NCBI RefSeq assembly: GCF_002113885.1
Contig: NW_018408421.1
Coordinates: 6,694 to 70,693 of the forward strand
Direction: 5' to 3'
Origin: Mizuhopecten yessoensis
Lineage: Eukaryota
DNA length: 64,000 nucleotides
Part shown: positions 25,845 to 59,049 of the stretch, one piece after another
How the letters are laid out: each line of letters begins with the position of its first letter
How positions within the stretch are numbered: position 1 is the stretch's first letter
Translations under genes and position numbers: made by a program
Notes under the pieces: model-generated
What the model was told of the DNA's origin: nothing
The model's database searches: none
The model's input: the letters and a program-made list of their open reading frames with translations, nothing else

Positions 25845-26000
25845 GTTGGTGAGATAGCACTATAAAGTCGGAGTTAGATCCACGCTATCACAAGGTGCCA
25901 ATTACACCAACACACCCTGCCTCCAGCACACACACACACGTGCACGCATACACAACACACATGGAGGCACGTCCTTAAATCATCTTAGCTGTTGATAGAA
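25845..26000 (+). mobile_element. 3' fragment of the same SINE family
   Basis: GAGATAGCACTATAAAGTCGG...(CA)n...GGAGGCACGTCCTTAAAT..CTTAGCTGTTGATAG. Confidence 0.7.
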
Positions 26001-29705: not shown

Positions 29706-32700
29706 ATGGAGGCCGTGCTGCAGATTTTTGTTCTTCTTTCCATGGCGACTTTGTCCTTTGGTAAGTTGTTAAGATACATACTTGAATTTAATGTTTTTAA
29801 CATGTTCATCAGTTGGATACATTGGTTACTTTTGTAGAATATATTTTCGACTTTTACCTCGTTGATGATCCACTTCATGACATTCATCTATAACAGCACA
29901 GCGATCGTCTCATAATTATGTATATGCGGTTATGGTTGACCTAGAAGTTCGATTTAATTATTTTCTCTGGGACTTAAAAATGTGTAAAGATACTTGAGAC
30001 AGCTTGTGAACGTAAAAGTTAAGATATATAAAGTTAACCTACCACTCAAACGTCATATAATGTAGGTACTATTTGTATGTTGGGAACTTTTCTCAGATAT
30101 TTGAGCGGATCCCAATCAGTTTGTGGTATTCCTGTTCATTGCATTACTTTTATTAGTAGATATTGTGTAACAGAAGTATAATATCATTTATGTATATATT
30201 TCACCCTGGTAAATTATTAGCAGCCTCCTGCCTACTGGGCTAGAGTGTAAAATTTTGTCACGCGCATTCGGTAGAGCGTAAGACTAGCAATCAAGAGGTC
30301 CAGGATTCGATTACTGGTGAAGGATGAACAAATAATGACCTCCGTTATATATATATTCCTACAAAAAATAGCGTCGTACCTGAAAATGAGTGGCATCCAC
30401 CTGCCACGTGAGCTTTTTATCCTACAACTTTCTGCCATTCATTTGTTGAGTGAACCGATGTGTAATACATTTGCTGAGTGAACCGATGTGTAATACATTT
30501 GTTGAGTGAACCGATGTGTTATACATTTGTTGAGTGAACCGATGTGTTATACATTTGTTGAGTGAACCGATGTGTTATACATTTGTTGAGTGAACCGATG
30601 TGTAACACATTCGTTGAGTGAACCGATGTGTAATACATTTGTTCAGTGAACCGATGTGTAATACATTTGTTTAGTGAACCGATGTGTAATACATTTGTTG
30701 AGTGAACCGATGTGTAATACATTTGTTGAGTGAACCGATGAGTAATACATTTGTTGAGTGAACCGATGTGTAACACATTTGTTGAGTGAACCGATGTGTA
30801 ATACATTTGTTGAGTGAACCGATGTGTAATACATTTACTAGGTATTTATTTGTCTAGAGAACTGGTTTGTACACGCGGGTGTCTAGTGAAAACATGGCCG
30901 TTCAACTGTGTCCAGAGGGTCAGTAGTCGTATATCTGTGTAGAAAACTGTCCACTTTTATTTAAGAGAATGTTCCACACATTGTCCACTTTCTTAGTTGA
31001 CCCACAATATTTAAACAATCAAAACGTATATTTAGTTAACACAACTCCGGGAAACATAGGAGATTTTACCCTGGTGTTTCGTGTAAACAGTAACCTATAT
31101 TTTATTTTGGTTTGGAAGTAAATGAAGCGCCTTGATCAGGGCGTCTTCAATGACAAGGTAGCTCATATAAAATCGAGTTACAGGGTCGATTCCTAGTCTA
31201 GTTCCGTTATTTGTTTTCACTCAGAAGAGTGTCGTTAATTTTAATTATTTTCGTCTTTGTCATTTTGCGATCAAAAGTCCTGCAAAATATTGTGTTCTTT
31301 GTGGAAAAGAATGATCAGACCTGAAAACGTGTCGAACGGTTTCCGAGTTATATTCAATATTTTGGCAGTGGTATGGGGATCCTTTAAAGAAAGTTACACA
31401 TGGAAGAAATTTAATCCTTTCAGCAGGATGTGGTCCTTGTGAATACGACCTGGTGACCGGACCCTACGGTGTGTCCGACGAGGCAATCACAGCGTCATCT
31501 ACCCACAGTCACTGCTCTTTAGTAAAAGCCAGATTCAGCAGTTCCAACAGCTGGTGTCCCCTTCATACTGGAGTTGGACATTATTTACAGGTAATGCTGG
31601 ACATGAATAGATTATGATGAAACACTATTTACAGGTAATACTGGGCAATTTTTCAAGTGATGATGAACACTTTTACAGATAATATGAGACATTATTGACA
31701 TGTAACTCTCCTCTTGGTTTTAATAATATTCTAGTAAAAAAATCGAAAGTTTTTAAACATACAGAGCAAAATATTGTATTCAAGAAAATTTCTTTTTATA
31801 CATATTTAACAATATTTACTATCGCATAAGGCATAATGTACTTGTAACTTCCCTCTTGGTTTCACTATTTCTTTTAGTAACACAATACGTAACATAATAA
31901 TTACATTCTAGAGTATATAGATCCATTACAATCACTACTAAAATACGGATGCAGTAGGAAAACACGTCTTCGAAAAACTAATAAGTGGAATTAGAAAGCC
32001 ATATCATGTAAATATTGACAATGCATCATAAAGTTATTTCGTCATCGATTTAAGTCTAATGAAATTCATGTTCAATGTGAAACAAATTTTAAAAAAGGAA
32101 AATGTATTTAAATCCCCGTTTACCATAACAAATAAAGAACATATGCTTAAAACAACTAATTTCTATTTAAACTAGTATTTAATGGTAACCGCAACAGAAT
32201 CAATTACAACTACAAGGCTACGACTTTTTAAGTTCATGGTGTATCATCATAAATGCATTTTAATGTACTAAGAATGGTTACCTGTTTTTCCCATACACAG
32301 GTGGAGTTTCGATCCGTCTCATTGCTGAAGGCAATACAGACTAAGGGACGGGGAGACACTAGTCAGTGGGTGACGTTGTACAATGTCAATATCAGTATGG
32401 ACGGACTCACCTGGACGTCCTTATCGAACTCTTCAGGCGACGTAAAGGTAACAATGTTCTTTTGAGGTCATGCGCAGCTATGCAAATCAAAAGATGGTCG
32501 AATTGTCTTGTGCCTCTTTAATGTAGATATTTAGAGGAAAACATATTTTGATATCTTGAACTACTTTCCTTGAGACTATATGAATTGAGAATGAAAAACT
32601 ATACGAAACTTAAACACCAAAGTCATATTTTCAAAATAATGACAGTCTAGAAAAATTGACAACCAGATGTGTGTCAGTTTGTTCCATATTCTAGTTGACA

Positions 32701-35700
32701 TTCATTTTTATTTTAAATATGCTATTTAACTAATCTAAAGCAGAGTCAGTGAAACTAGCACCAGTGTTGAACGTTCTCGCTATGATAAGATCACATGAAG
32801 ACGGTTGTCTGGGGAGACAGCGTCAAAAAATGGCACGTAGGGGAGTCTCCGACGTAACCACAAGATTCTATAGAAAGTCCAACATTGGTGGCAATTTATT
32901 TTAAAAACGCCCCCTAATCCTCATGAAAACCAGAATCCAGGTAACTACTGCCGGGTATACCAGGGGTTTGTTTCCTAGCTCAATACTTTGTAAATTTGTC
33001 TTTTAATAACATAACATAGATGAAGCAGTAGACAATAAACTGATTTGGAAATTGTCCAGTTTTCGACCGTTTTCCAGAAGGAAATGATACGAAATACACA
33101 GGGAAAAATTGAAGGGTCGTTGGGAGTAACTTAAAAGAGGTTTGTATTGGGAAATCCATTTGATTCGAGGCTGTCACGCAAGGCTGTCGTCAACTGCATG
33201 CATATCCAAAAAATGTAGTTTGACCGCGGAACACGATTTTTTGAGGAAAAGGAGATCATGTCTGCAGAAAGAGAATATATTCTACTTGGAGATAGGAGGT
33301 TTATAAAAGAAAAAAAATCCATATTTGAAAGCAGTCTTTTTGTATATCAACTTATATTGTTCATGCAAAGTTCGGTTGGTCTGATCTGTCTTCATTGAGG
33401 GCTATCCTCCCTGTTCGTTTATACCATCAATTGTTACGGTGTTTTAACCAACCAAAAGTTAAATTAAACCGCTAAAACCTTTAATTTCTTTCTGAACACA
33501 TTAGTTTAGGTCCAAACATAGCTAATCTGTAACAAATTCTTAGGTCCCTCTTCTTAGAAACACAAATGCTACCAAATGCTGTATCCATTTCAGCATCTGG
33601 ATCATTTGGGATCGTTAAGTTCCTCTGTTTTGTTTCCGTTTTGTTTTCATTTCCAAGCGCATATTTGACTTTGCCTCAGTGTTCCACTTGAGGTTAAAGC
33701 GTTGACCAAACCGGGGAAGGCTGTGGGCTCTGTTCCATGACAGAGACAAAACAAAAGTCCTTAAAATTGTTACATGCTCATCTTTTGATAAGTAGCAGTA
33801 AGAACAGGTTTACATATTGTCAATATAATTTAACCAGGTGGAATATTGTGCAGGGCGCATTCGGCATGCAATTTCAGTAAGGTGGATACTCTGAAGGTGT
33901 AATTTGATCCACGCTGTCGCAAAGAGTAAAATACACCAACATATTAACTCCAGCACCATACCAACGTAGCCCACACAGACTGACTGGCCACAGCTGTTAG
34001 TAAGATGCTGAATTCGAAAACAAGAGGCTCAATGGTATTAATCTCACACTTGTAACCTTAACAGTAGACCAAAATAAAGCGCTAATACTAATAAAAATTT
34101 GCTCCCAAATTCAATATGGCCGCCTACCGGCTATTTTGGTTTTCCAATCATCCCCAAAATTCACAATACATGACAAGAGACCATAGGAAACCTTGATGTG
34201 AAATTTGAGAAAGATCCTTCCTGTACCTTCTGAGAAATAGCGCTAGCAAACTAAACCAAACCTTTCTTTCATATAATGCTGAGATATATATTCCACCATA
34301 ATATTCAAATATATGTCGATCTTATTCGTTCTACAAATGAAAGTTTTTTTCGTGTCTACGTTATGTCCATAATATATCAGGTGACCTGGATGATACTTTT
34401 TTTCCTTTTTTTCATGTCCGACTTCATGGGCAGTTGTCTTTTTTTTTTTTTTTTTTTCAACCGATTAGGGAAGACCAACATTTGACAGATTTACGAACAC
34501 TTTTTTAAGTCACCTTCCAGGTTGGTTCAACGGAACATTCTGACAATGAGCCTGACATGTTTAAAGAAGATTTAGAAGTTAAATAAAAAGCATGCTTATT
34601 TGTCTTCAAGCCAGTCTTTAATTACATGTAAAATTAAATGTGAGTACTTTCATTCGAAAAAAGGTAACCATTTCAGTTGCCCACTTGTTTAGATTTGCGA
34701 CGGGAATTCTTTGAAGAGTGTTGATCTGTTGGAAAATAACATAGGCAAGCGCATGGTCTATCCTCCAACAAAACATTACGATTAACCAATGAAAAGCTTC
34801 GTAACATTGAGGACTGTGGTATCTGTCTATTGTATATATTCAGTCAGGTAAAGGGACATAACTCGTCCATACTCGCCATCTGTTATATGTGGAACTCTCC
34901 AATGTGAAGTTAATAAATTATGTTGAGTGGAATGGAACACATGTGTTGACTGGATCTAATATGTACAAGAACGAATCAGGTTCAATCCGGGGATGGGCAA
35001 GTCATCCAAACATATGAAGCACGTTAGATGCTACAATTGGCGACGAGGATAAAAACTGTATACATTTAATTGGTTAAAATGGCGACATACATGGAAATTG
35101 GAGGTATTCCAAATTTTGATTGCCACGGAGATTCGTCCGCCATTTCTCAACGATGGAGAAAGTGGAAAAGGGCATTCGAACTGTTTGTTGTGGGCAAGGG
35201 TATAACAGATCTTACACAGAAAAGGGCGTTGTTACTCCATTGTGCCGGGATGAGAGTGCAGGAAATATTTGACACACTCGCGGACACAGGAGAAGATACA
35301 GATTACGACAAGGCTGTACAGAAGCTGGGAGAGTACTTCGCGCCACAAGGAAACATTTCATTCGAGAGACACCAGTTTCGGCAACTCAAACAGGAGTCTA
35401 GTGAGTCAGTTGAACAATTTATAACGAGGTTACGCGATAAAGCCATGACATGTGAATTCGGAGATGGTAAAGACGACCAGATCCGTGATCAGGTTATCGA
35501 CAAGTGTAAGTCGACACATCTACGGAAGAAATTTCTGGAAAAGGGAGGAACATTGACCCTCACAAAAATGCTGGAAATGGGTAGAGCGCATGAAGCAGCA
35601 GAGAGACAGGCAGCAGTAATGCAGGAAGAAACTGTACACGCAGTTTATGAGAAAAGGAAAGGACACAAACCAGGTTACCAGGGGGCTGACCGTTTCAATA

Positions 35701-38700
35701 CAAGTAGTCAAGGTAACAAATCTCAAGCATGCTTCCGGTGTGGGAGACAGGGACACTATTCAAAAGATAAGGAATGTCCAGCCAGGAATAAGAAATGCAA
35801 TAAATGTCATAAAATGGGACATTTCCAGAAGTGTTGTAAGACAAAGGGAGGTAATCCAGGGAATGGCCGATCACAGGAACGTACGGTGAAATATGTACAA
35901 GATCAGGATTCGGTTGAGTTAACTGACTACGTTTTTAGTGTTGTTAAAGAACCAGTTGGAGAACAGGTTAGTGTGATAGTTGGAGGTGTGCCGATATCAT
36001 TTACTGTTGATTCAGGGGCAGGTGTTAATATGATAGACCGAGAACTCTGGGAAAGTCTGAAAAAGTCAAAGATAAACTGTGTAAGTAACAATACTGACAA
36101 GAAATTGTTTGCTTATGGAAGTACCAAGCCACTGCCTTTAGCAGGATGTTTTGAGGCTGATGTCATACTTGGAAACAAGATGGTACCTAGGGTGATGTTT
36201 TATGTTTTGGAGGGAACAGGCCAACCACTACTAGGCAAGATGACTGCTATAGAATTAGGAGTTCTACATGTGGGTACTGGGCACATTAATTCCGTTGAAC
36301 ATGATATCAGTAAGGCTGAACTTATGAAGAAATACCCTGAATGTTTCACAGGAATTGGGAAATTGAAAGACTATCAAATGACTATAGCACTGGACGACAC
36401 AGTTACGCCAGTTATTCAACCATTGCGGCGTATACCCTACCATTTACGTGACCGACTTGAGAGCAAAATACACGAGCTGGAGTCATTAGACATTATTGAG
36501 AAAGTCGAGGAACCCAGTGCATGGGTAAGTCCAGTTGTTATTATTCCCAAGTCAAACGGGGATATTAGACTTTGTGTTGACATGCGAAGGGCCAATGAAG
36601 CTGTAATTCGTGAACGGTATCCGATACCAACTGTAGATGAAATACTACAGGACCTGAATCAGAGCAAGGTTTTTTCAAAACTTGATATTCGCTGGGCGTA
36701 TCACCAGATTGAGCTAGCCCCAGAGTCACGTGGTATTACAACATTCCAAACTCACTTAGGCATGTATCGGTATAAACGACTAATGTTCGGGATCAGCTGT
36801 GCCCCTGAGCTCTACAACAAAATCATACAACAGGTTCTGAGAGAGTGTCCAGGTGTCAACAGTATATTTGACGACATTGTTGTTCACGGAGAAACACAGG
36901 GTGAGCACAACAAAAACTTGGACAAACTGTTACAAACCTTACGTGAGAAGGGCTTGACATTGAATTTGGACAAATGTCAATTTAATATGTCACAGATTAC
37001 ATTCATGGGACATGTACTTTCAGAGCATGGAATCAGTCTCGACGAGGACAAAGTCAAAGCGGTCGTGAACGCGAGACAACCTTCAAATGCTGGAGAAGTA
37101 AGAAGTTTCCTAGGCCTAGTCAATTTTAGCTCCAGATTCTTACCCAACCTGGCAACTGTATCTGAACCCTTACGACAGTTAACCCGAAAGGATGCACCAT
37201 TTAATTGGGGTCCAACTCAGGAACAGTCTTTTAAGAAACTTAAGGCGATGTTGTCAAATGCATGTGTTTTGGGATATTTTGACCCAAAAGCCAAGACGCA
37301 GGTTATCGCTGACGCGTCACCTGTGGGATTAGGAGGAGTGCTAGTACAGGAGCAGGACAATCACACACGTGTAATTTGTTACGCGAGCCGTAGTTTGACA
37401 GACATTGAGCGGAAATATTCACAAACCGAGAAGGAGGCCTTAGGACTGGTCTGGGCATGCGAAAGGTTCCATATGTACCTATATGGACAGGAATTTGAAC
37501 TTGTTACAGATCACAAACCTCTACAGTTCATTTTCTCACAGAAATCCAAACCCTGTGCTCGTGTAGAACGCTGGATTTTGCGGCTACAGTCCTATACCTA
37601 TACTGTCAAGTATATACCTGGATCTCAAAACATCGCAGATTGTTTGTCTAGATTGATTTCAAAGTCTTCTGATGGACCATCACATCATGATACTGAGACC
37701 TACATCAAGCAAATTGCAGAGTACTCAACTCCAGTTGCTATGACAACACGCGAAATCGAACGCGCCTCGGATAATGACCCGGAACTAGAAGCTGTTAGAA
37801 ACTGTATTGTAAACGGCAAGTGGTCAGAGATTCCCTACAAAGAGTATCTACCTGTAAGGTCTGAACTGTGTGCTATAGGAAAACTTGTGTTACGTGGGAC
37901 GCGGATTGTGATTCCCAAGTCGCTGCGTGAAAGTGTACTGAACGTAGGTCATGAAGGACACCCGGGCATAGTTGCCATGAAACAACGAATACGATCAAAG
38001 GTATGGTGGCCTAAAATGGACATACACATTGAAAAACATTGTCAGTCATGTTATGGATGTCAGTTGATGGCTAAACCATCAAACCCTGAACCTATGGTTA
38101 GGACCGAGCTACCCTCAGGTCCTTGGCAGGATTTGGCTGTGGATTTTTTGGGACCTCTCCCAAGTGGTGACAGTTTATTTACCTTAGTTGATTACTACTC
38201 AAGGTGGGTCGAGGTCACTGTGATGAAGTCGACTACTACTGACAAAGTCATCGCAAGTCTGAAAACTACATTTGCCACTCATGGGATTCCAACTTCAATC
38301 CGTACAGACAACGGTCCACAATTTATCAGTGAAGAATTCAAGCAATTTTTACAAGAATATGGTATAATTCATAAACGTACCACACCACTATGGCCTCAAG
38401 CCAATGGTGAAATTGAAAGACAAAATCGATCCCTGTTGAAGAGACTCAAAATTGCACAACAGGAACAGAAGGATTGGAAAACAGAGTTACAAACCTATTT
38501 GATCATGTACAGGTCTANATATGAAGCACGTTAGATGCTACAAGGACGTGGTGGAATTTTGCGTGATCATGGGCTTACATTATTAATAATATATGATTAA
38601 ATATCCTCCCTTCTTTATAATATATAGGTGTTTTCCGGAAACTACGACAGCAATACAGTCGTAACCAATGTCGTAGAAGGAACTGTCGTCGCCAAGTACA

Positions 38701-39958
38701 TCCGGGTTATATCCGTCTCTATGTTTACCCACGGATCAATGAGACTGGAGGTTCAGGGCTGTCCGTACTCAGAAATAAGCAGTATGTATTCTGTCATCAG
38801 TGTTGACATAATGCAATTACTAATGTTTAATTATATTATGTTTTGCACTCTTTCAATCGTGTATTTAATTGTATTTATAAAGTCAATAGTTGTTTAATCT
38901 CATGCATAAGCCATATATGTATATTAATTTACGAACTCATTCAAGTTCATTTTATATATTTTCTGCAAAACGTATTCATTCTTAATGATGTTGATCAGTT
39001 TTTGTGATCTGGAAGTTTCTAATGTGCTTGAAATGAACTTACCAAATTAAAATGTTTCTATTTTCCATTTTGACATAATAAATACATATTCCATTAAAAT
39101 AAAGAATTGAGGTAAGCTTCAGGAACGCAGTTAATTAGTAATTAAGTTTACCTCACTATTGTATTTTTTTCACAAATTAAAAAAAAAAGTAAATGTTATT
39201 AATTTTAGTGGAAGCCCTAACTTCAAGCGAAGGTTTTGTCGTAGCGTAGTTAAGTGGGTTAGTAGGTAAGTATGTAATACTGGTGCATACGTTTTGTTTG
39301 CTATTGTTTAAAGTCCTGTGTCTCCTGTGTGTAATGTATGCGTGCTTTGAGGCCGGATATGTTGGTGTATAAGCCTTATTCGAATAGCAGATCTGATGCC
39401 CACTTAGAGTTCTTCCTCTCTGAAATACCATATCAAAGGCAACCAGCACAGTATTCCTCCCGATCACATTAAACTGACAACGGGTAGCCTTGTTGTTGTC
39501 ATTACCCTTAGCGCTGGAAGTTAGTCAGGAAGGGAACTATGAACTACTATTCGTTTTCAATGACCAGTTTAGGCGCCGTTTATTACATGTAGTGGGATGT
39601 AGCAGGATTATTCTAACCCCAAACCTACAGTGGTAGGGTGAAAAAAATTGATGTTATTGTTTTTATGTGTAGAATAATAGAATGCCATGCTTTGTATGAT
39701 GGAACAATATGTATTTAAACAGGTACATGTCATCGCTGGGGAGCCAAACTTGGAATTACTGGTGACGTACTTTCTATTCTCCTAGACACGGACGCATCGA
39801 ACCAAGGACTGTGTGGATTAAAGTGTTACAGACAAAGGGAATGTGACAGTTTCCTATTTGACGTCACTTCCACTCAATGTAGATTACTAAAAGGGACAGT
39901 GAATGGGTCACAAATCACGGTTGATCTGGACGGGATTTGGTATTTTGTGAAAATATGA
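29706..39958 (+). CDS. Copy B: secreted F5/8 type C (discoidin) + PAN/Apple-like protein, 252 aa, 5 exons
   Basis: Exons 29706-29760, 31424-31590, 32301-32447, 38628-38781, 39723-39958; GT-AG, phases 1,0,0,1, open throughout. Signal-like MEAVLQIFVLLSMATLSFA; discoidin motifs ITASS, ARF, SWCP, YLQVEF, AIQTKGR, QWVT, SMDGLTW, VFSGNYDSN, AKYIRV, SMRLEVQGC; PAN-like CGLKC-x5-CDSFLF-x6-CRL. Confidence 0.9.
30440..30835. repeat. 28-bp minisatellite, 14 copies, intron 1 of copy B
   Basis: Unit CATTTGTTGAGTGAACCGATGTGTAATA. Confidence 0.97.
34815..38542 (+). mobile_element. Gypsy/Ty3 LTR retrotransposon (Mag-like) in intron 3 of copy B
   Basis: 5' LTR 34815-35035 (TG...CA, 221 bp); PBS TGGCGACGAGGAT 35038-35050 complementary to tRNA-Ser(GCU) 3' end; last 24 nt of the 3' LTR at 38519-38542 identical to the 5' LTR; TSD AGGAC at 34810-34814 and 38543-38547. 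Confidence 0.95.
35079..38517 (+). CDS. Single-ORF Gag-Pol polyprotein (Gag zinc knuckles, protease, RT, RNase H, integrase), cut by an N at 38518
   Basis: CFRCGRQGH...C / CNKCHKMGH...C, VDSGA, SIFDDIVV, ADAS...TDHKPL, HEGH...CYGC, AVDF / TDNGPQF / NGEIER; no stops or frameshifts. Confidence 0.95.
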
Positions 39959-42875: not shown

Positions 42876-43784
42876 TATTAGCTCACCTGGCCCGAAGAGC
42901 CAAGTGAGCTTATGCCGTGGTGCGGCTTCCGTCGTTCGTCGTCCGTCCGTCGTTCGGCGTCAATATTTGGTCAAGGTAATTCATTTGAACAAACTTATTA
43001 GCCCTTTATCCTAGCATGCTAAAGGCCCAATATCAGTAACCTGGGACTTTTGGGTATTGAGAAGAAGTCGTTTGAAGATTTTAACACATTTTACCCCTGT
43101 GACCTTGAAAGCATGTCAAGGTCATTCATTTGAACAAACTTTGCAGCCTTTCATCCCAGCATGCTACAGGCCCAAATATCAGTACCCTGGGCCTTTTGGT
43201 TATTGAGAAGAAGTCGTTTGAAGATTTTTACGACATGTGACCCCAGTGACCTTGAAAGTGGGTCAAGGTCATTCATTTCAACAAACTTGGTAGTGCTTCA
43301 TCCCAGCATGCTACAGGCCCAATATCATTACCCTGGGCCTTTCGGTTATTGAGAAGAAGTTTGTCACAGGGGTCAAATATGTAATAAACCTTTAAACGAC
43401 TTCTTAATAAGCAAAAGGTCAAGGGTGATGATATTTGGCCATTAACATGCTGGGATGAAGGATTACCAAGTGAATGACCTTCGTCCATATTCAAGGTCAC
43501 AGTGGTCAATAAATGTTTAAATCTTTAAATGATTTGTTCTGTAACCAAAAGGTCCTGGGTAATGATATTTTGCCAGAAGCAATGTTGGGTTGAAAGACTA
43601 TAAACTCTGTTCAACCTAATGTCCTTGTTCGATATTCAAGGTCACAGGCGTGTTTAAATCTTTCAATAGGTTCTTATGAATAAAACACTGGTATTCTGCC
43701 TGTAGCTGTATTTTAGTCCACTTTTAAGAGTACAAGCGTGAAATTAGTACCAGGTGAGCGATGCAGGCCCATTGGGCCTCTTGT
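42876..43784 (+). mobile_element. HINE-type Helitron of the 19379 family with internally inverted core repeats
   Basis: TTAGCTCACCTGGCCCGAAG...GTGAGC, CGTC-type tract, CAGGTGAGCG..CAGGCCCATTGGGCCTCTTGT end; cores at 42969-43361 are reverse-complemented. Confidence 0.88.
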
Positions 43785-44496
43785 ATTGTGAAGTATAGGT
43801 AATGAAAGCGCTATGCTTAATGTGACAACCGAGGGTTGAGATTCCCTTATCGCACCCTCAAGGGGATGAGTGATTATTTTTCTCTTACCATGTTCTCCCA
43901 TTGTGTATCATATACACAGTGGGATGATAACGTTACATGCTAAATTCATGGCTGACGTGACGTTGATGGATTGTTGACGTGACGTCATTGTATTGTTGAA
44001 GTGACGCCATTCCAAAGAAAGATTCTTAAGTGTCCAGACATTCTATTAATCTCACACAGGTAAAAGAGCGGATACACCTTTCCAGGGTAAGAGAATGCAC
44101 TATGTTCACTCTCTACTAAGGAACAATTTGTAACTTATTCAGAACAAAATCATATGAATAAACAATAGTAAAAGCCATATATGTATATTTACATTCTGTG
44201 TTGCATTTGCCTGTATGTCGTTAGTAAACCAAATTGCAGTATATGAGACTGTATACTACAATTTACAGTTATACGGCCAGTGTAGGAATACAGCTGGTAC
44301 AAGGTAAACAAACATGGCCGCCAGTCACATCCGATATCAATAGGTTCGTTAACATTTAGCAATGTAGGTCATCGCAAAAACTAAAGCAACTTGACAAATT
44401 ATAACAATATAAATTTATTATGAAATGTGTAGGTACCACAAACCTATTGTAAGCGCCATTCTAAATACGATATTACCAAGTGTGTCAACGTCATCA

Positions 44497-47600: not shown

Positions 47601-47734
47601 GTAGGAAATTTGTAAAAGTACTTGAGACCGCTTGTGAACTTATTAGTCAAAATATTACGTTGTTCAAACAAAGGAGACAATCCCGTAGTGCTTCACAATT
47701 AAAGCAATATATAATACTACAATGACGTTTAATT

Positions 47735-47937
47735 GGTGAAAACAATAGCCGTACAACTGTATGGTACAGGTGAGTGTCTCGTAAAAGATTAACCATACAA
47801 GTGCATGTTACAGTTGAGTGTCTAGAAAAACAATGGCCATTAAACTGTGTGGTAAAGGCGGGTGTCTTGTGAAATTAATAGGCGTACAAATGTATGGTAC
47901 AGGTGGGTGTCTAGTAAAACAACAACTTACAACTGTC
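47735..47937. repeat. Degenerate 44-bp tandem repeat, ~4-5 copies, intron-1 remnant of copy C
   Basis: GTGTCT anchors at about 47774, 47818, 47862, 47906. Confidence 0.7.
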
Positions 47938-48112
47938 CGATAACATATGTCAAGTGGGTCAGTTGTCGTATATATGTATAGAAATTTGTCTAGTTGCCTT
48001 GTAAAGAAGTTCAACACAACGCATGGGTGGTCTTAGTCACAGTTTTGGCAGTAGTACGGACCACGACCACACCGAATCTTAGTTACCCATCAAAGAAATG
48101 AAAACCTTTCAG

Positions 48113-48269
48113 CAGGATGTGGTCCTTGTGAAAACGATCTGGTCACGGTATGTCCGACGATGTTTTCTCAGCGTCAATTACTCACAGCCATTGTCCTATA
48201 GACAGAGCCAGATTCAGCAGTTCCAGTCACTGGTATCTCCTTCACTCTGGAGTCGGAGACGTTTTACAG
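48113..48269 (+). pseudogene. Copy C: orphan exon 2 of the discoidin-PAN family with a 10-nt frameshifting deletion
   Basis: 157 nt versus 167 nt; GCGPCENDLV then loss of the TGPY codons; SWC changed to HWY; flanked by intron 1 and intron 2 remnants, no exon 1 upstream. Confidence 0.85.
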
Positions 48270-48510
48270 GTAATGCTGGCATTATTTACAGGTAATGCTG
48301 GATGTTATTTAAGTGATGATGAAATACTATTTACAGGTAAAGCTGGACATTATTCAAGCTATAATGAAACACTATTTATAGATTATATCAGACCTTATTG
48401 ACATTAAACTCCCCTTTTTGGTTCAATATGTCCTGTAGTAAAAATAAACCCAAAGTTTTAAAACATACGGAGCGATATATATAGTTATATTTTATGTATT
48501 TAAAACTATT

Positions 48511-51500
48511 TCCCGATTGTATAATTACGTGTAACCTCTCTTTGGGTTTCACTATACTAAAAGACTGAGTGATATATAATATTTATATTACTGAGTTATT
48601 CCAGAATAGTTTTTGCTAAGTGGCCATTGATTTACAAAAAAGAACAAATTGAACCACGACAACCGATACTAATATACGGACGCAGTATGAATAAAACGTT
48701 TTCGTTAAACCGCAAAGTCGATTTAAAAGGCCATTTCATGTAAATATTTACATATATATGGCAATTTGTCGTCGACTTAGATCTAATGAAATTCATGTCC
48801 AATGTGCTCTGAAATATATTTAGAAAAACAGATACAGGGAAAGTGTCTATAAATCCCCGTTTACCATAACAAATAAGCAAAGTATGTATGATTACACCAT
48901 ATACTATATCTATAAACTATTATGAAATGGGAACCACGGCAACGAAAATGTCCAGGTACACAGTAATAATTGCTATTTTAGAACACGGTTGTTTACAGAA
49001 TATTAATTTCTGCGTATGAATTTTATCACTCCCTTAAAATTAAAGGAAAGGGGAGGGAATCCCAGGTAAATAAACAACTTCCATTGTTAAACAAATGCCA
49101 TTAGGAAGATGATACCGCAGCCCATTAAGCTTACCAGTTGGATGAACATTGCCATTATAATGCGGTTTTTTATTGTTGACACAGACTCGGAAATGACGTC
49201 ACAAAATCATTTTCTCCATAACTGTCTGCATAACCGACTGCTAAATCGAACTCTACAAGACATTGGCCTAGGATCCATACGACGGAGAGCATGCTACAAA
49301 TTGTTATTCTCCTATCCATGGTGATTTGGTCCTTTGGTAAGTTGTTTATATACATTCTTTAATTTGATGTTTTAGCAATTGTTTCATTAATTTCGTACAT
49401 TGGTAACCTCTGTAGAATATATTTACCATTTTAATCTCGTTGACCACTCTCTTCATGGTATTCATCTGTAACGGCTCAATAACCGACTCATAATGTTTTA
49501 TATGGCGGTTGTGGTTGACCTAGAAGTCAAAATAAAAAATAAAATCCTGAGGCGTAGGAAATTTGTAAAAATACTTGAGACAGCTTGTGAACTTATTAGT
49601 GAAAATATCAAGTAAACCTAACACGCAAACGATATACAATGTAGGTACTACTCCTGGTAGGATAGTTTTGTTTTTAGATATTTGGAGCGGATCTCCATCG
49701 ACAGATACTGGTATTTCTAATTCCTGCATTCATTTTATTAATATGTATCTTATAATTGAATTATCTTATTATTTATGTATATATGTCACATTGGTAAAAT
49801 AATAGCTGTCTCCTGCCGACTGGGCTATAGCGAAAAAAAGGTCCGGCGCATTCGGTAGAGCGTCAGGCTATTAAACCAGATATATCAGATTCGATTCCTA
49901 GTGGAGGCATTGAACACATATAGTGTCCTCAATTGCATAAACATACATATATTTAAATTCCTACTCAAGTTGGAATCATTGCAACTACCAAATGTAACCT
50001 GTTCATTTGCCGATGATTTTGACCGGGTTAACATTGCCTGTGTGTTGGATTTTGCGAAGGGAGATAACTAAGTTGACATGTTTAAACAAAGAAGATACAA
50101 CTTGATGAGATTTTACATTTTAATTGAAGCTACACAAGAAATTGATCAAACAACCAAAAACGATCAACCAGCAAAATATTATCAGCTTACGATTGCTAGC
50201 GGTAGTGACAAGTCATCTACTACCCTAGAAATACTCTCTCCAGCTACCCATTATGCCTTTTGTGTCGGTATCAACCCCCGGTACAAATATAAAACAACGT
50301 AAATCCATTTCCCGGTTGTATAATGACGTGTAACCTCTCTTTGGATTTCACTGTATTAAAAGACTGAGTGATATATAATATTTATATTACTGAGTTATTC
50401 CAGAATAGTTTTAAACTTTTGCTAAGTGGCCATTATTTTACAAAAAAAGAAAAAGAACAAATTGAACCACTACAACCAATACTAATATACGGACGCAGTA
50501 TGCATAAAACGTTTTCAATAAACCACAGAGTCGATTTAAAAGGCCATTTCATGTAAATATTGACATATATATGGCTTTTTGTCGTCGACTTAGATCTAAT
50601 GAAATTCATGTCCAATGTGCTCTGAAATATGTTTAGAAAAACAGATAAAGGGAAAGTGACTATAAATCCCCGTTTACCATAACAAATAAGCAAAGTATGA
50701 TTACACCATATACTATATCTATAAACTATTATGAAATGGGAACCGCGGCAACGAAAATGTCCAGGTACACAGTAATAATTGCAACATATATAAATCTGTT
50801 CCCCCAAAACAATTCTTACAATTTATTTGATAATAAAATTTTAATAAGTAGTGATAAATATTATGTTCGGGTCATAAAACTAACATTCTCTCTTTTTTAC
50901 AAGAGGCTTTATCTAAAGTGTGATTAAGACAAACGTGACACGTAAAGGAAATATTGACAGACAGTATCGATACATCCTAGCTGTGGCGTTCATTTATTCA
51001 TGTCAGGCGACGACCTCAAGATTGGACAAGAAGATTTTACAACACGGTTGTTTACAGAATATTGATTTCTGCGTATGAATTTTATCTATAGTTATCAATC
51101 ACTCCCTGAGAATTAAAGGAAAGGGAAGGGAAACACAGGTAAATAAACAACTTCCATTGTTAAACAAATGCCATTAGGAAGATGATACAGCTGCCCATAA
51201 GCTTACAAGTTAGATAAACATTGCCATTATCATGCGTTTTTCATTGTTATTATCGCTTCGCTACTAAAGCCAAACACTCCTAATTGGCACCGACTCGGAA
51301 ATGACGTCACAAAATCATTTTCTCCATAACTGTTCTGCACAACCGACTGCTAAATCGAACTCTACAGGACATTGGCCTAGGATCCATACGACGGAGAGCA
51401 TGCTACACATTGTTATTCTCCTATCAATGGTGATTTTGTCCTTTGGTAAGTTGTTTATATACATTCTTGAATTTTATGTTTTAGCAATTGTTTTATCAAT

Positions 51501-52362
51501 TTCGTACATTGGTAACCTCTGTACAATATATACGATTTTAATCTCGTTGACGATTCTCTCCGTGGAATGCATCTGTAACGGCTCAATAACCGACTCATAA
51601 TGATTTATTTGGCGGTTGTAAAAATACTTGAGACCGCTTGTGAACTTATGAGTGAAAATATTAAGTAAACCTAACACGCAAACGATATACAATGTAGGTA
51701 CTATTCCTGGTAGGATAGGATTTTGTTTTTAGATATTTGGAGCGGATCTCCATCGACAGGTAATGGTATTTCTAATTCCTGCATTCATCTTATTTATATG
51801 TATCTTATACTTGAATTCTCTTATTGTTTATGTTTATATGTCACACTGGTAAAGTACTAGCTGTCTCCTGCCTACTGGGCTAGAGCGAGATAAATGTCAG
51901 GCGCATTCTGTAGATCGTCAGACTAGTAAACCAGAGATATCAGATTCGATTCCTAGTGGAGGCATTGAACACATATAGTGTCCTCAATTGCATATACATA
52001 CAAATATTTCAATTCCTACTCAAGTTGGAATCACTGCAACTACCAAATGTAACCTGTTCATTTGCCGATGAATTTGACCGGGTTAACATTGCCTGTGCGT
52101 AGGATTTTGCGAAGGGAGATAACTAAGTTGACATGTTTAAACAAAGAAGATACAACTTGATGAGATTTTACATTTTTATTGAAGCTTCACAAGGAATTGA
52201 TCAAACAACCAAAAACGATCAACCAGCAAAATATTATCAGCTTACGATTGCTAGCGGTAGTGGCAAGTCATCTACTACCCTAGAAATACTCTCTCCAGCT
52301 ACCCATTCTGCCTTTTGTGTCAGTATCAACCCCAGGTACAAATAAAAAACAACGTAAATCCA
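48511..52362. repeat. Tandem segmental duplication (~1.8 and ~2.05 kb units) containing promoter + exon 1
   Basis: Units about 48511-50307 and 50310-52362 both start TCCCG.TTGTATAAT.ACGTGTAACCTCTC and end AAAACAACGTAAATCCAT. Confidence 0.9.
49291..49336 (+). CDS. Duplicated (possibly alternative) signal-peptide exon 1 for copy D
   Basis: MLQIVILLSMVIWSF + G|GTAAGT donor, same phase as 51400-51445. Confidence 0.6.
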
Positions 52363-55300
52363 TATGGTCCCGTCTTATAAGAAATGCAGTCGAACATCCA
52401 AATGCCATATCAAATTGTTTTCATCCTTTCAAGCCACGTCTGGTTTTCTGTCACTTAGAGCTATTAGAAAGATGGCTGCCGTAGACACGCAGCTGAGGTT
52501 GCGCACCGCATCTAGACATTATTCTCCCGCGATGGCTCGTCAGAAGATATGAAATTAATACCTAGACTTGCACAAGCTCCAGAAAATATCTGAATGGAAA
52601 TTATTGAAAAAAACCACACACGTTGATTGAAATATAAGGTTTGAATCTTGGCTTGGTCAATTTCATTGGGTGATGTTTTGAGCTGGTCTTGAAACAAATC
52701 CGACATGAACTGCTTAATTAAGCGTCATACTTTCAAGTGAGTGGCATATACGTGACTAGTGCGCTTTATATCATAAAACGTTTTGCCATACATGTGTTAA
52801 GTGGACCAGTATTTAAAAAAATATTTCGTATTAATGTGCTGATTGGACCAATGTTGTAATTAATTTACCAACTCGATGGTACATACGGGTGTCTAGTGAA
52901 ATCGATAGCCGTACAACTGTCGGATAACATGTGTCAATTGTGTCAGTACAGTCATTATAGAGAAGTTCAACACAATGCACAATTTCTTAGTTGACTCAAA
53001 ATATTAATAAAAAAACATATCCGGAATTAACCCAATTGTAAGGAATCAATGAAGGACCTCATTTTCCTTCGAGGTAAACATAAGGGGTTCTACTGTGTTG
53101 TTTCGTATATAAAGTAACCTTTCTCATATTTCGTTATGGAAGTAAATATAGCGCAACTTGACCAGGGCGCCTTCATTGACAAGGAGGCTCAGTTGGTTAC
53201 ATCGACAGTAGACTTATATCGATGTGAGTTACTGGCTCCTAGTCTCAGTGGATAACATTGACAGTTAACTTATATAGATGTGACCTACAGGCTTCGACTC
53301 CTAGTCTCAGTTGGTTACATCGACAGTAGACTTATATCGATGTGAGTTACAGGCTCCTAGTCTCAGTTGGTTACATCGACAGCAGATTTATATCGATGTG
53401 AGTTACAGGCTTCGACTCCTAGTCACAGTTGGTTACATCGACAGGCTCATAGTCTCAGTTGGTAATATCAACAGTTAACTTATATAGATGTGAGCTACAG
53501 GCTTCGACTCCTAGTCTCAGTTGGTAACATCGACAGTAGACTTATATCGATGTGAATTACATGCTCCTAGTCTCAGTTGGCAACATCGACAGTAGACTTA
53601 TATCGATGTGAGTTACAGGCTCCTAGTCTCAATTCGTGACATCGACAGTAGACTTATAGCGATGTGAGTTACAGGCTCCTAGTCTCAGTTGGTAACATCG
53701 ACATTAAACTTATATAGATGTGACTTATAGGCTTCGACTCCTAGTCTCAGTTGGTTACATCGACAGTAGACTTATATCGAATTGAGTTACAGGCTTCGAC
53801 TCCTAGTCTCCATTTGTCACATCGACAGTAGACTTATATCGATGTGAGTTACAGGCTCCTAGTCTCAGTTGGTTACATCGACAGTAGATTTATATTGATG
53901 TGAGTTACAGGCTTCGACTCTTAATCTCAGTTGGTTACATCGACAGTAGACTTATATCGATTTGAGTTACAGGCTTCGACTCCGAGTCTAGCTGCGTTAT
54001 TTGTTTTTCACTCAGAACAGTGTTGTTAATTTCAATTAATTTCGTCTTTGTCATTTTTTCGATCAGAAGTCCCGCAAGGTACGATTTTCTTTGCAGAAAT
54101 GAAGATGTAGTCATGAAGACAGGTTTCCAAGGTATATTCAGTTTTGGTAGCTGTACGGGGATCTTTAAAAAAATGTTTCCCATATAAAAGTAATTTAAAC
54201 GTTTCAGCTGGATGTGGTCCTTGTCAATACGACCTGGTGACCGGACCCTACGGCGTGTCGGACGATGCAATTACAGCGTCAACTACTCACCGTGATTGTC
54301 CTATAGTGAAAGCCAGATTCAGCAGTTCCAGAAGCTGGTGTCCACTTTATTCTGGGGTCGGACACTTTTTACAGGTAATGCTGGACAGTATTTACAGGTA
54401 ATGCTGGATATTATTCAAGTGATGATGAATATTATTTACAAATGACATCTATATTTCTTCTAGTAAAACACCGAACTTTTAAATCATACGGAGCGATATA
54501 TATTTTTTTCAAGAATATTTTAAATATATATTTAGTACTATTTCCTAGTCTTATAAGGCATTATTTACGTATAACTTCCCTCTTAGTTTCACTATTTCTT
54601 TTAGTAAAACACTACGTTATATATGATATTTACATTCTTGAGTTATTCCAGAATAGTTTTAAACTTTTGCTTAGTGTCAATCAATTTAGAACAAAAGATG
54701 GAAAAACCCCCACTACAATCACTATTAAAATACGGATACAGTAAGAAAACACATTTTCAATAAACCAATAGATGGATTCAGAAAGCCGTATTAGCATTAG
54801 GTAAATATTGACAATGTATCAAATGTCTATTTCGTCGGCGATTTAGGTATAATGAAATTCATCAAAAAATAGATAAAGAGAAGATCTTTTTAAATCCCCA
54901 TTAACCAAATAAACAACATGTGATTACAACAGCTACTTTATATTTAAACTAGCATTTAATGGGAACCGCGGCAGAATCAATTCCAACTATATGTACCAGG
55001 CTACGGCCATTTTAGTTCATGGTGCATTATCATAAATGCATTTGTTTTTACTTATAATAGTCTCTTGTCGTGCACAAACACAGGTGGAGTTTCGATCAGT
55101 CTCAATGCTGAAGGCAATACAGACTAAGGGAAGGGAAGACTATAGTCAGTGGGTGTCTTTGTACAGTGTCAACATCAGTATGGACGGAATCACCTGGACA
55201 TCCTTATCGAACTCTACAGGCGATGTACAGGTAACAATGCCCATTTAAGGTCATGCGCAGCTATGCAAATCTACAGATGGTTGAGTTGTTCTGTTTTTCT

Positions 55301-58300
55301 AAAATATGGATTTTTTAGAGGAAAATAATTTCATATCTTGAAAACTATACGAAACTTATAAACCTAAGTTACAATTTCAAAATGATGATAAACTAAAAAA
55401 CTTGACAACCAAAGATGTGTGTCAGTTTGTTCCATATTTGTGTATGTTGACAATTATTTGTATTTTATTTATGCTAGTTAACTAATCAAAAGCAGAGCCA
55501 ATGAAATTAGTCTCAGTGTTAAACGTTCTTGCATATGATAAGGTCACATGGAGGCGGTTGTCAGGGGAGACAGTGCCAAAGATGAAAGGGCACGTAGGAC
55601 AGTCTCCGAGAAACAACAATATTTTGCAGAAAGTAGGGGGCCGCGGTGGCCAACTGGTTAAGGCGTCTGACATTCTGCTACCGCTAGCCCTCAACCACTG
55701 GGTCGCGGGTTCGAGGCCTACGTGTGGCAGTCGCCAGGTACTGGCCGTAGACCAATGGCCTTCTCCGGGGTAGTTCGGCCTTGCTCCACCACCAAAACCT
55801 GGCACGTCCTTAAATGACCATAGCAGTCAATAGGACGTAAAACACAAACAAACCAAACCTGCAGAAAGTCCCCAATTAGTCGCCACCTATGATAACGTAC
55901 ATTTGGATGCAGCAGGCCTTTTCTTTCTCCGAATCTAAGGGTTTTGGAAATAGATACAGAAACGCCCTCGAAACCTCATGATCCGGGTAACTACTGCCGG
56001 TATACCAGGGGTTTCTCCTCTAGCTCAAGGCTATGTACATTTGGCTTTTATCAACATAAAGGAAGTAGATCAAGCAGTAGCCAATGTACTGATTTGGAAA
56101 TGTTCCAGGATTCCAACGTTTTCCAAAAGGAAATGATAAGATATACCACAGGGACAAATTGAGTGGTCGTTAGGGATATTTGTCCAGTAAAATCGCCTGA
56201 CAAGGCCTCTATGTTCGCCTTGGTGTTGAAGCGTTCGCCGAAGCGAGGAAGACTATGGGCTCTGCCCCTGACCGAGACACAACATAAGTCCGTAAAAAGT
56301 AATTGTAAGGAGAGATTTATCCAGGGTGCATTCGGAAAGCCATGAGTTAGGTACTCCGAAGGAGGCATTCAACCTGCGCTATCGCACAGAGTCAAATACA
56401 CAAACTTACTGCCTCCAGCACCCATGTAAACGTTGCACCCATTACAGAACGACTGACCGTTCCTGTTAATAGGATGCTGATTATTCATTAACAGTCGCCA
56501 TTTGGTCGACAGACGATAAACAATAATCACTGTCGTCATGCTTTATACGAGATGTTTATTTCAATGAATATAATCCTCTAATCTATCGACATCGCTGGTC
56601 AACAAATTCAATCAGCAATTGACAGATTTACAAACGCCATTTTAAGTCACCTTCCAGAGTAGTTCAACGGAACAATCTGACTATGCGCCTGACAGGTTTT
56701 AAGTAGATTTAGAAATTGAATAAATCATGTTTGTTTGTCTGCTAGCAACTCATTTATTAAATTTAAAATTAAAGTTTTGTACCCTTCATTCGACAAATGA
56801 AATCATTGCGTTGACCACTTGTTTAGATTTGCATTGGAGGTTTTTGGAAGTGTTGGTCTGTTGGAAAATAATATATGCAAGCGCATGATATATCGCCAAA
56901 CAAAGCATGGCTATTAACCGATGGAAAGCTTCGTAACCTCGAGGATGTGGTAGATTTAAGAGTAATCATGGGCTCACTATAATAATGATATATGATTAAG
57001 TATCCTCCCTTCTTTATAAAGGTGTTTCCCGGAAACTCCGACAGAAATACAGTCGTGACCAATGAACTAGAAGGAACTGTGATCGCCAAGTACATCCGGG
57101 TTATATCCGTCTCTATGCATTCCCACGGATCAATGAGACTGGAGGTTCAGGGCTGTCCGTACTCAGAAATAAGCAGTATGTATTCTGTCATTAGTATTGA
57201 CATAATGCGATTACTAATGTTTAATTATATAATGTTTTGCACTTTTTCATTCGTTTATTGTTGTTGAATTTATAAAATCAATCAAAGTTTAATCTCCTGC
57301 ACAAGCTGAACATATGCAATACATGTATATTGATTTTCGAACTCAACTTCATTTTCTGATTTTTTTTCCTGCGAAACTGATTCATTCTAAATTGTACTGT
57401 TTTTGTGATTTTGAAGTTCTTTATCAAATTAGATGAAAAAAATAATTGTTTTCTTTTATTAATGTGCTTGCCAGGTACTTACCTAATGTAAATGTTTCTA
57501 TTTTCCATTTTGACATCATACATACGTATTCCATTTGAAAAAAAAGGAGAAAATTTACCTTGCTTTTGTACTTTTTAACAAATTTTGAAAAAGAAACCAA
57601 ATTTAATATGTTGACAATAATATTGAATTATGTGTAAATTAAGAAAAGATGTAACAATTTTTCAACAGGAGAATTTGATGATAAGAATATGAAGGAAAGC
57701 TGATGTATGTGACTTTCACCGGTATTTGAATTAATTAGAATTATTTTCCAAATTTGGTATACCTGAAGTATACCTCTCTGAAATACCATGCCGAAAGCAT
57801 CCAGCACGATATTCTACCCGATCACATTAAACTGACAACGGGTAGCCTAGTTGTTGCCATTACCCTTAGTGCTGAAAATTAAGTAACATTTATTTGTTAT
57901 TTCATCATATTTTATTGAGTAAACAATAGGATTGAACAGCAGGCTAGGCCTATATAAGTTCTCTCCTTAGGTTGACATGACAAAGACAAAGATGAATGAA
58001 ATGGTTTGTAAGAAAATATTGATGCAAATCATATATAATAGGTAGCATAGACATATATATATATATAGCAGATGGTATAGGGGAGATAATTCCATGTATG
58101 TTTCAATTACATATAAATATTTAATTGATATTTTTAGCTATACAATGCTCATATTAAAAAGTCAATCATAATTAATTAGTAATAGGAAAGCAATGCCCTA
58201 ATGATATATTAAACAGAGAAATTGCTACATTTTTTTTTTTGTTTTTTGTTTTGCAAGTCATTAGTGCCCCCTGTTCATACCCTGCTGCTGTTGCATGAAG

Positions 58301-59049
58301 TAGTTAGAAGTATAGAACCATTTAGTATCAATATATATATCATTGGTAGGAGTGATAAAAAGTAAGGGATACAACAACATCAAAATATGAAAAAATAAAA
58401 TGAGGCAATTCAGCTAGAAGATTTTGATAATGTAGTATATGTGTAAGATGTATTGCCAGTGTTCTATGTGTAAATCTTTCATCCCATCGAGTTTCAGACA
58501 AAAAGTCTCTAACGGCCTCTACCGTTCACATATCATCCACTCGAGAAGAATCCAGATTAAACCACAGAACACTAAGCATTCAAACTTAGCACATTTAAAA
58601 GTAACATTTATTATTGATAAGGACTGGTATATCCCAGCAGCGGATCAAGTTTGGCTTTTTCACTGTGTTCTTTTACGACAAATAGTGAGATGTAGCAGGA
58701 CCCCCCGCCCCCCCCCCTCCCCTGTTGGGGTGGGTTGCACACTATTATTGATTTTACGTGAAGAATAATAGAATTCCATGCTTTGTATGATGGGACAATA
58801 TGTATTTGAACAGGTACATGTCATCGCTGGGGAGCCAAGCTTGGATCCACTGGTGACGTACTTTCTATTCTCCTGGACACGGACGCATCGAACCAAGGAC
58901 TGTGTGGCTTAAAGTGTTACAGACAACCGGAATGCGACAGTTTCCTGTTGGACGTCAAGTCTGATCAATGTAGATTACTTAAGGGGTCAGTGAATGGGTC
59001 ACAAATCACTGTTGACCTGGACGGGGTTTGGTATTTTGTGAAAATATGA
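51400..59049 (+). CDS. Copy D: secreted F5/8 type C (discoidin) + PAN/Apple-like protein, 249 aa, 5 exons
   Basis: Exons 51400-51445, 54208-54374, 55084-55230, 57022-57175, 58814-59049; exons 2-5 have the same lengths and phases as copy B; open reading frame with all 10 Cys conserved. Confidence 0.9.
53188..53988. repeat. 56/62-bp tandem array of tRNA-like units, 14 units, intron 1 of copy D
   Basis: Unit CTCAGTTGGTTACATCGACAGTAGACTTATATCGATGTGAGTTACAGGCT(TCGACT)CCTAGT; one unit truncated to 30 bp. Confidence 0.95.
55635..55859 (+). mobile_element. Full-length tRNA-derived SINE (V-domain-like) with 10-bp TSD, intron 3 of copy D
   Basis: A box TGGCCAACTGG, B box GGTTCGAGGCC, CTCCGGG...CTCCACCA core, (AAAC/AAACC)n tail; TGCAGAAAGT at 55625-55634 and 55860-55869; absent at the homologous site in copy B (about 32870). 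Confidence 0.9.
57895..58598 (-). mobile_element. 5'-truncated CR1-like LINE end with 14-bp TSD, intron 4 of copy D
   Basis: AAGTAACATTTATT at 57881-57894 and 58599-58612; minus strand VEAVRDFLSETRW..RF remnant and GGAGAGAACTTATATAG...CAATCC...AATAAA tail; absent from copies A and B. Confidence 0.7.

What the first reader, a model, noticed from the sequence alone, without database searches (positions are those of the whole stretch)
29706..59049. Tandem family of small secreted discoidin (F5/8C) + PAN/Apple two-domain proteins in birth-and-death evolution
Seen: two intact 5-exon genes with identical exon lengths, plus two dead copies (A, C). The C-terminal exon is missing from the ORF track and only appears after splicing. 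Established: F5/8C domains bind glycans, phospholipids or collagen through tip loops, and PAN/Apple modules mediate protein or carbohydrate contacts. Inference: a compact bifunctional recognition or bridging protein (lectin/opsonin, mucosal or gamete recognition). I do not recognise a characterised protein with exactly this architecture.
Basis: partly seen in the sequence, partly recalled or inferred. Interest (0 to 1): 0.8.

Follow-up and report, generated by a model that had tools for sequence, protein, structure and literature searches.

The report
Scallop discoidin–PAN secreted protein cluster
These are two copies from a real, expressed but unstudied scallop gene cluster that makes small secreted two-domain proteins whose binding tips change fast, probably to recognise varied targets; both domains are well known, so this is a modest lineage-specific variant, not a new kind of system.

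Summary
Largely confirmed. The window is Yesso scallop (Mizuhopecten yessoensis; identical to scaffold NEDP02005094.1 over 24.9 kb). Genes B and D have five GT-AG exons and encode signal peptide + F5/8C (factor VIII C2/neuropilin type, not F-type lectin) + PAN/apple, about 250 aa. RNA contigs join D exons 2-3-4-5, and exon 5 folds as PAN. Corrections: B is intact only on paper (Gypsy element and an N in intron 3; RefSeq models exons 1-3 only), and exon 1 of 'dead' copy C is RefSeq's alternative first exon of D. The family has 24 or more members in four scallop genera, with species-specific clades, pseudogenes and exon exchange. About 12 copies lie on ~195 kb here. F5/8C tip loops evolve at dN/dS 0.5-1.5 versus 0.1-0.3 elsewhere; positive selection is not shown. 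Cysteine covariation suggests a new N-terminus-to-PAN disulfide. Best reading: a secreted adaptor with a variable tip and a more constant PAN end; ligand unknown. Databases hold only automatic names and no paper was found, but both domains co-occur in large cnidarian and mollusc clusters. The scan had already noted the loop/RGD pattern on this same stretch.

The parts
29706..29760 (+). Gene B exon 1 (signal peptide)
   Evidence: matches OWF43462.1 and XP_021367741.1
31424..31590 (+). Gene B exon 2 (CxxC, start of F5/8C, tip loops 1-2)
32301..32447 (+). Gene B exon 3 (F5/8C, tip loop 3 with RGD at residues 91-93)
34815..38542 (+). Gypsy-type LTR retrotransposon in B intron 3; 5-bp target duplication AGGAC, TG...CA ends, gag-pol ORF from 35070; N at 38518 left unfilled
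38628..38781 (+). Gene B exon 4 (end of F5/8C, linker)
39723..39958 (+). Gene B exon 5 (PAN/apple domain, stop)
48113..48270 (+). Copy C: broken exon 2 (10-nt deletion, one loop cysteine lost)
48975..50308 (+). Copy C: duplicate of D's promoter/exon 1/intron 1 region (86.5% identical to 51034-52363)
49291..49336 (+). Copy C exon 1, open and with a donor site; alternative first exon of D in RefSeq isoform XP_021367745.1
51400..51445 (+). Gene D coding exon 1 (signal peptide); RefSeq X1 starts at an upstream ATG at 51301
54208..54374 (+). Gene D exon 2
55084..55230 (+). Gene D exon 3 (F5/8C; RED where B has RGD)
57022..57175 (+). Gene D exon 4
58814..59049 (+). Gene D exon 5 (PAN/apple domain, stop); RNA contigs continue to at least 59300
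1..1589 (-). Copy A: inverted 3' fragment (exon 4 with a 4-nt deletion; exon 5 runs off the window)
25660..25858 (-). Old relic of exon 3 with its acceptor site (ends approximate)
   Evidence: tblastn E 0.006; DNA score 109 against a maximum of 73 in 266 random windows

Best explanation
A scallop-family tandem cluster of small (about 25 kDa) secreted two-domain proteins that work as recognition adaptors. Shown: signal-like N-terminus, no transmembrane segment, F5/8C beta-sandwich, PAN/apple module, splicing and expression of D, purifying selection on the cores, fast tip loops, exon exchange between copies, gain and loss of copies. Inferred: the tip loops of F5/8C are the specificity end, each copy binding a different surface glycan or protein. 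The tips are spread over exons 2, 3 and 4, so exon exchange recombines them. The more conserved PAN module binds a shared host partner or a common glycan, so the protein tags or bridges its target, most plausibly in innate defence in haemolymph or mucus. Also inferred: the clustered copies lost the last PAN cysteine and pair the first (C177) with a new N-terminal cysteine (C21), which fixes the two domains together or links subunits.
For: Models and domains. Expression and splicing. Tip loops fixed from the factor VIII C2 alignment: dN/dS 1.49 versus 0.27 in B-D (Fisher p 2e-5), and 0.5-1.5 versus 0.1-0.3 in six pairs. Column entropy is 1.93 at the tips, 1.54 at the base loops (p 0.03), 0.68 in the core and 1.24 in PAN (those boundaries were drawn after seeing the profile). 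Species-specific clades have support 99/96 and 98/99. Broken copies occur in three fetched loci. Exon 3 of D and XP_021367726.1 is 94% identical at DNA level against 77-78% for the other exons (p 2e-6). C21 present goes with one linker cysteine in 15 of 15; C21 absent goes with two in 4 of 6; the two distant paralogues keep both outer PAN cysteines. The nearest PAN folds include the apicomplexan apple lectins SML-2 and MIC4.
Against: No ligand, tissue or challenge data. Tip dN/dS is never significantly above 1 (p 0.27-0.86 where it is near or above 1), and surface loops drift fast anyway. PAN fold matches (Z up to 7.8) show no function. The full-length model was poor (pLDDT 59), so domain packing and the C21-C177 bond are not modelled. 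The cysteine test ignores relatedness. Contig depth cannot rank expression.
Confidence: 0.5

Rival explanations
1. Matrix or adhesion protein working like retinoschisin: subunits joined by intermolecular disulfides between the cysteines flanking the discoidin domain, with the tip RGD engaging cell integrins (mantle, shell, byssus, mucus or wound matrix).
For: In retinoschisin Cys59 and Cys223 flank the Cys63-Cys219 bond and link subunits (PMC5978886); C21 and C177 flank C24-C168 in the same way. RGD sits in tip loop 3 in 7 of 24 members, in all four genera, plus one more copy. Oyster integrins and haemocytes bind RGD peptides (PMC7390872).
Against: RGD is absent from most copies, D included, and the arginine belongs to the conserved T-x-G-R motif, so RGD can arise by chance. 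Copies without C21 mostly gain a local partner for C177, which fits a bond that tidies up a free cysteine better than a required subunit link. Rapid turnover is less expected for a structural protein.
Confidence: 0.22
2. Gamete-recognition proteins diversified like oyster bindins.
For: Secreted, polymorphic tips, recombination between copies; bindins use the related F-type fold (PMC5712786).
Against: No F-type motif. A multi-gene cluster rather than few genes with tandem domains. D's last exon is held by runs of 12 studies from 2015-2025, which fits broad low-level expression better; tissues are not disclosed.
Confidence: 0.1
3. Lactadherin-like opsonin that binds phosphatidylserine on dying cells through the C2-type tips.
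For: The domain is closest to factor VIII/V C domains, neuropilin b, CASPR2 and lactadherin; some copies carry RGD.
Against: Against factor VIII C2, loop 1 is four residues shorter and loop 3 two residues shorter, and the hydrophobic tip residues are replaced by polar, variable ones. In lactadherin the RGD lies on a separate EGF domain (own knowledge).
Confidence: 0.08
4. The expansion is largely neutral: one conserved function, with redundant copies drifting and dying in a recombination-prone array.
For: Many broken copies; tip dN/dS is compatible with 1; the array is rich in repeats.
Against: Cores of several copies stay under purifying selection (0.1-0.3). Separate expansions occurred in at least two genera, and several intact copies persist in each of four.
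Confidence: 0.1

Closest known systems
Scallop RefSeq/GenBank models with automatic names (XP_021367744.1/745.1 'contactin-associated protein-like 2', OWF43462.1 'Neurexin-4', XP_033727843.1 'discoidin-2-like', XP_069106631.1 'lactadherin-like', XP_021367762.1 'retinoschisin-like')
   Same: The same proteins or family; D's five exons are letter-identical to XP_021367744.1 and B's to OWF43462.1.
   Different: The names come from best hits to the F5/8C domain alone; none of the other domains of CASPR2, neurexin or lactadherin is present, and no paper on these accessions was found.
Retinoschisin (RS1)
   Same: Small secreted protein with one discoidin domain, a second disulfide in the tip loops, and extra cysteines flanking the terminal disulfide.
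   Different: RS1 has no PAN domain and is not an expanded, variable family (own knowledge); oligomers are untested here.
Lactadherin/EDIL3 and factor V/VIII C domains
   Same: Same domain type (profile E 1e-44 to 1e-18; Foldseek E about 1e-10).
   Different: No EGF domains, one F5/8C only, hydrophobic membrane spikes missing, PAN added.
Molluscan 'fucolectin-like' F-type lectin + PAN proteins (Atlas cluster, 211 members, 253 aa)
   Same: Same size and same two folds.
   Different: That cluster is PF22633-dominated; the scallop proteins lack the fucose motif and score on PF00754. Domain order in the cluster was not checked.
Cnidarian 'lactadherin-like' F5/8C + PAN_1 proteins (Atlas cluster, 290 members, 283 aa)
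   Same: The same two Pfam families in a small protein (99% and 92% of members).
   Different: No sequence-level relative surfaced; order and common origin are untested; uncharacterised as far as my searches reach.
Apicomplexan apple lectins SML-2 and TgMIC4; plasminogen and HGF N-domains
   Same: Closest solved folds to exon 5 (Z 7.8, 6.8, 7.3, 6.2; rmsd 2.5-3.2).
   Different: 14-18% identity; the scallop module keeps four core cysteines and lacks the last one; sugar-binding residues were not tested.

Membership tests
F5/8 type C (discoidin) domain, coagulation-factor type | Pfam PF00754 above cut-off | tested here: met
   72.3 and 70.3 bits against 28.2 on database proteins P0052 and P0039; exon-wise hits
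F5/8 type C (discoidin) domain, coagulation-factor type | Beta-sandwich fold with terminal cysteine pair | tested here: met
   Foldseek hits to neuropilin b1, CASPR2, DDR2, factor VIII C2; C24 and C168 invariant
PAN/apple domain | Pfam PAN_1 above cut-off | tested here: met
   23.5 and 24.9 bits against 21.4 for exon 5; borderline in full-length D, 21.1
PAN/apple domain | PAN fold (helix on sheet, core C-x3-C-x5-C...C) | tested here: met
   Model pLDDT 88.7; 15 top-ranked VIA rows are PAN/apple-type, Z up to 7.8; Foldseek top rows likewise, though E above 0.001. The alignment included distant PAN repeats.
PAN/apple domain | Third, outer disulfide (C1-C6) of full apple domains | tested here: not met
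   The last cysteine is absent in clustered copies and present in the distant paralogues P0050 and P0011; four-cysteine PAN modules are still PAN
F-type lectins | Fucose motif HX24RXDX4(R/K) (PMC5712786) | tested here: not met
   No match with spacing 22-28 in five members; PF22633 below cut-off
F-type lectins | Fucose binding | not testable with these tools
   needs a glycan array
Lactadherin/EDIL3 | EGF domains with RGD, then two C domains | tested here: not met
   No EGF, one F5/8C
Lactadherin/EDIL3 | Hydrophobic membrane-inserting spikes | tested here: not met
   Loops shorter and polar against factor VIII C2
Retinoschisin | Single discoidin domain with a short tail, no further domain | tested here: not met
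   PAN domain follows
Retinoschisin | Disulfide-linked octamer through flanking cysteines | not testable with these tools
   C21 and C177 are placed analogously; covariation does not tell intra- from intermolecular
CASPR2/neurexin IV (the automatic name) | Laminin G, EGF, fibrinogen-like and transmembrane parts | tested here: not met
   250 aa, no such Pfam hits, no hydrophobic segment after the signal
Birth-and-death multigene family | Tandem copies, pseudogenes, species-specific clades | tested here: met
Birth-and-death multigene family | Positive selection on binding sites | tested here: inconclusive
   Tips faster than the rest (p 1e-3 to 5e-9) but not significantly above neutral

The most novel reading that the evidence does not exclude
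An undescribed scallop repertoire of germline-diversified soluble recognition proteins. Variable discoidin tips on three separate exons are recombined between tandem copies, joined to a more constant PAN end and fixed by a new inter-domain disulfide; RGD-bearing copies would hand targets to haemocyte integrins.
Probability: 0.2. Interest if true: 0.65.

Novelty: new variant of a known kind. Interest (0 to 1): 0.36.

Why it matters
Bivalves rely on expanded families of secreted recognition proteins. This cluster looks like an overlooked one, hidden under seven misleading automatic names in four scallop genomes, several of them farmed species. It offers cheap natural experiments: B versus D (RGD versus RED, 83% identical, differences piled in the tips) and copies with or without the C21-C177 pair. 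It does not change any general picture unless different ligands and an immune role are shown.

Tried and rejected
The word search with exon 5 alone found nothing; its length filter cannot reach 250-aa proteins, so the one big search was used. Following the operators' note, I searched the spliced model exon by exon by reference and left the joined search out; the join was only translated inside a script to check frames and compare B with D. Later full-length searches, trees and folds used database proteins returned by the tools. N stretches (24298-24539, 38518) were not filled or looked up; the loci fetched from this assembly do not span them. The retrotransposon was described, not reconstructed. 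Paper searches for the architecture or the accessions gave nothing relevant; the library lacks most subscription journals. The full-length structure model was too weak for domain packing. Rejected: F-type lectin, lactadherin, CASPR2 or neurexin identity; a second gene in the GC-rich block at 41558-41760 (no ORF support, not pursued); PAN-exon conversion between D and copy Y (exon 5 is more conserved in all distant pairs). Paralogue-like RNA contigs in run X1 (11 and 16 differences) do not match B (23 and 11 differences). Absence of the family outside scallops is not shown: word searches see only 0.55-1.75 times the query length, and the big search used only the PAN exon.

Full report
Observation. 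Self-comparison of the window shows two long homologous blocks (about 29.3-40.0 kb and 51.0-59.1 kb), partial copies at 47.5-50.8 kb and an inverted piece at 1-1589. Reading the splice sites gives two five-exon genes with GT-AG introns in phases 1-0-0-1 and no internal stop: B, 252 aa, and D, 249 aa. They are 83% identical with overall dN/dS 0.35, exons 2-5 have identical lengths, and both have ten cysteines at the same positions. Searched exon by exon, exons 3 and 4 match Pfam F5_F8_type_C and exon 5 matches PAN_1 above its cut-off. The N-termini are hydrophobic and nothing later looks like a membrane segment; SignalP was not available.

Expression. Twenty runs from twelve studies hold D's last exon. 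In the three runs on record or guessed as RNA, contigs carry the joint 57175->58814 with GT..AG ends; in two of them one contig covers exons 2, 3, 4 and 5 with 0-3 differences per exon. The fourth run covers the introns throughout and lacks the joint.

Identity. The big search with exon 5 returned scallop proteins. One of them led to 16, and a profile to 27, proteins, nearly all from Mizuhopecten, Pecten, Argopecten and Ylistrum. D's exons are letter-identical to XP_021367744.1, and the window matches scaffold NEDP02005094.1 without a difference over 24,903 bases. The names in the databases are automatic and vary from copy to copy. No paper on the family or its accessions was found.

Corrections. 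B's third intron holds a Gypsy element with a 5-bp target duplication and an N near its end. The duplication shows that the two halves of B belong together. However, RefSeq ends B after exon 3 (128 aa, no PAN) and only the GenBank model joins all five exons, so B may be truncated in life. Copy C has a frameshifted exon 2 followed by a duplicate of D's promoter and first exon; RefSeq isoform X2 splices that exon to D's exons 2-5, so part of C may be alive. Copy A has a frameshift in exon 4, and an older exon-3 relic lies near 25.8 kb.

The cluster. Beyond the window the same scaffold carries more copies up to about position 203 kb, some intact, one with a stop in the PAN exon, one with a frameshift. 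With two further RefSeq models this makes about twelve copies or fragments. A tree of 26 proteins has a five-member Mizuhopecten clade (99/96) and a five-member Argopecten clade (98/99), an unresolved base, and a distant pair from Pecten and Argopecten on other chromosomes. The Argopecten member of that pair has its introns at the same places, so the architecture is older than the expansion. Copies exchange exons: D and XP_021367726.1 are 94% identical in exon 3 but 77-78% elsewhere (p 2e-6), and B's exon 2 is closer to XP_021367755.1 (91% aa) than to D (80%) while its other exons are closer to D.

Domains. The F5/8C domain is of the factor VIII, neuropilin and CASPR2 type. It lacks the F-type lectin motif given in PMC5712786 and the hydrophobic membrane spikes of factor VIII C2. 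Exon 5 gave a confident model (pLDDT 88.7) whose nearest solved folds are PAN/apple modules; these scores are middling and show fold, not function. The distant pair keeps all six PAN cysteines. Clustered copies lost the last one and kept the first (C177). Where a cysteine stands three residues before the first discoidin cysteine (C21), the linker has exactly one cysteine (15 of 15); where it is missing, 4 of 6 copies gained a second linker cysteine (Fisher p 0.003, relatedness ignored). I infer a C21-C177 bond. Retinoschisin uses similarly placed cysteines to link subunits (PMC5978886), so the bond could be within or between chains.

Evolution of the tips. With loop limits taken from the factor VIII alignment, the tips change about three to seven times faster than the rest of the domain in all six pairs tested: dN/dS 0.5-1.5 against 0.1-0.3. 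They are never significantly above 1. Tip columns are somewhat more variable than the loops at the opposite end (p 0.03). I confirm it: RGD lies in tip loop 3 of B and of six more of 24 members, in all four genera, but not in most. Oyster haemocyte integrins bind RGD (PMC7390872), but the motif is not conserved enough to carry the mechanism.

Mechanism. Most likely (0.5) these are secreted adaptors: a variable discoidin tip recognises a target and a steadier PAN end binds a shared partner, in defence at mucosal surfaces or in haemolymph. Structure, expression of D and the evolutionary pattern are shown; ligands, tissue and the bridging step are inferred. Rivals are a retinoschisin-like matrix or adhesion role (0.22), gamete recognition (0.1), neutral expansion (0.1) and a phosphatidylserine opsonin (0.08).

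Novelty. Both domains are common, and the pair occurs in Atlas clusters of 211 mostly molluscan and 290 mostly cnidarian proteins of similar size, so the combination is not unique. What seems undescribed is this scallop cluster, its exon exchange and its rewired cysteines. Verdict: new variant of a known kind, interest 0.36.

Noticed in passing
window 5475-12960 (+): Multi-exon gene for a mitochondrial inner-membrane peptidase (IMMP1L-like); two exons match Peptidase_S26. Ordinary neighbour, usable as a synteny marker.
   Followed up: partly
window 34815-38542 (+): Gypsy LTR element with a long open gag-pol frame (protease, RT, RNase H, integrase) and an exact target duplication, so probably a young insertion; its 3' end is interrupted by an N.
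   Followed up: partly
window 39999-42556 and 59219-63440: The block downstream of B is repeated downstream of D (about 70% identity), including a GC-rich, promoter-like patch at 41558-41760 and 62466-62700; no coding role found.
   Followed up: no
window 14087-15800: 27-30 bp minisatellite (42 copies) that produces several spurious long ORFs.
   Followed up: no
window 19442-20443 and 42969-43787: 146-bp tandem repeat arrays, also present in the Pecten locus L001; they resemble the bivalve Helitron-linked satellites (own knowledge).
   Followed up: no
window 55637-55860: High-copy SINE-like repeat in D intron 3, absent from B.
   Followed up: no
window 53185-53989 and 30440-30836: Different tandem repeats (56/62 bp in D, 28 bp in B) have expanded in the first intron of each gene.
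   Followed up: no
L003:24773-26880 (-): Two called 'genes' inside the cluster are translations of a 36-bp minisatellite, probably annotation artefacts.
   Followed up: partly
L002:1-25792: In Argopecten one family member is flanked on both sides by C-type lectin-domain genes, a weak hint of a recognition-gene neighbourhood.
   Followed up: no
window 48098-59049: GenBank model OWF43463.1 (317 aa) fuses copy C's broken exon 2, read in another frame, to D; it looks like a prediction artefact.
   Followed up: partly
L001:20076-20297: A PAN exon with a stop codon next to the Pecten gene, whose own exons 4-5 are not within the fetched stretch.
   Followed up: no
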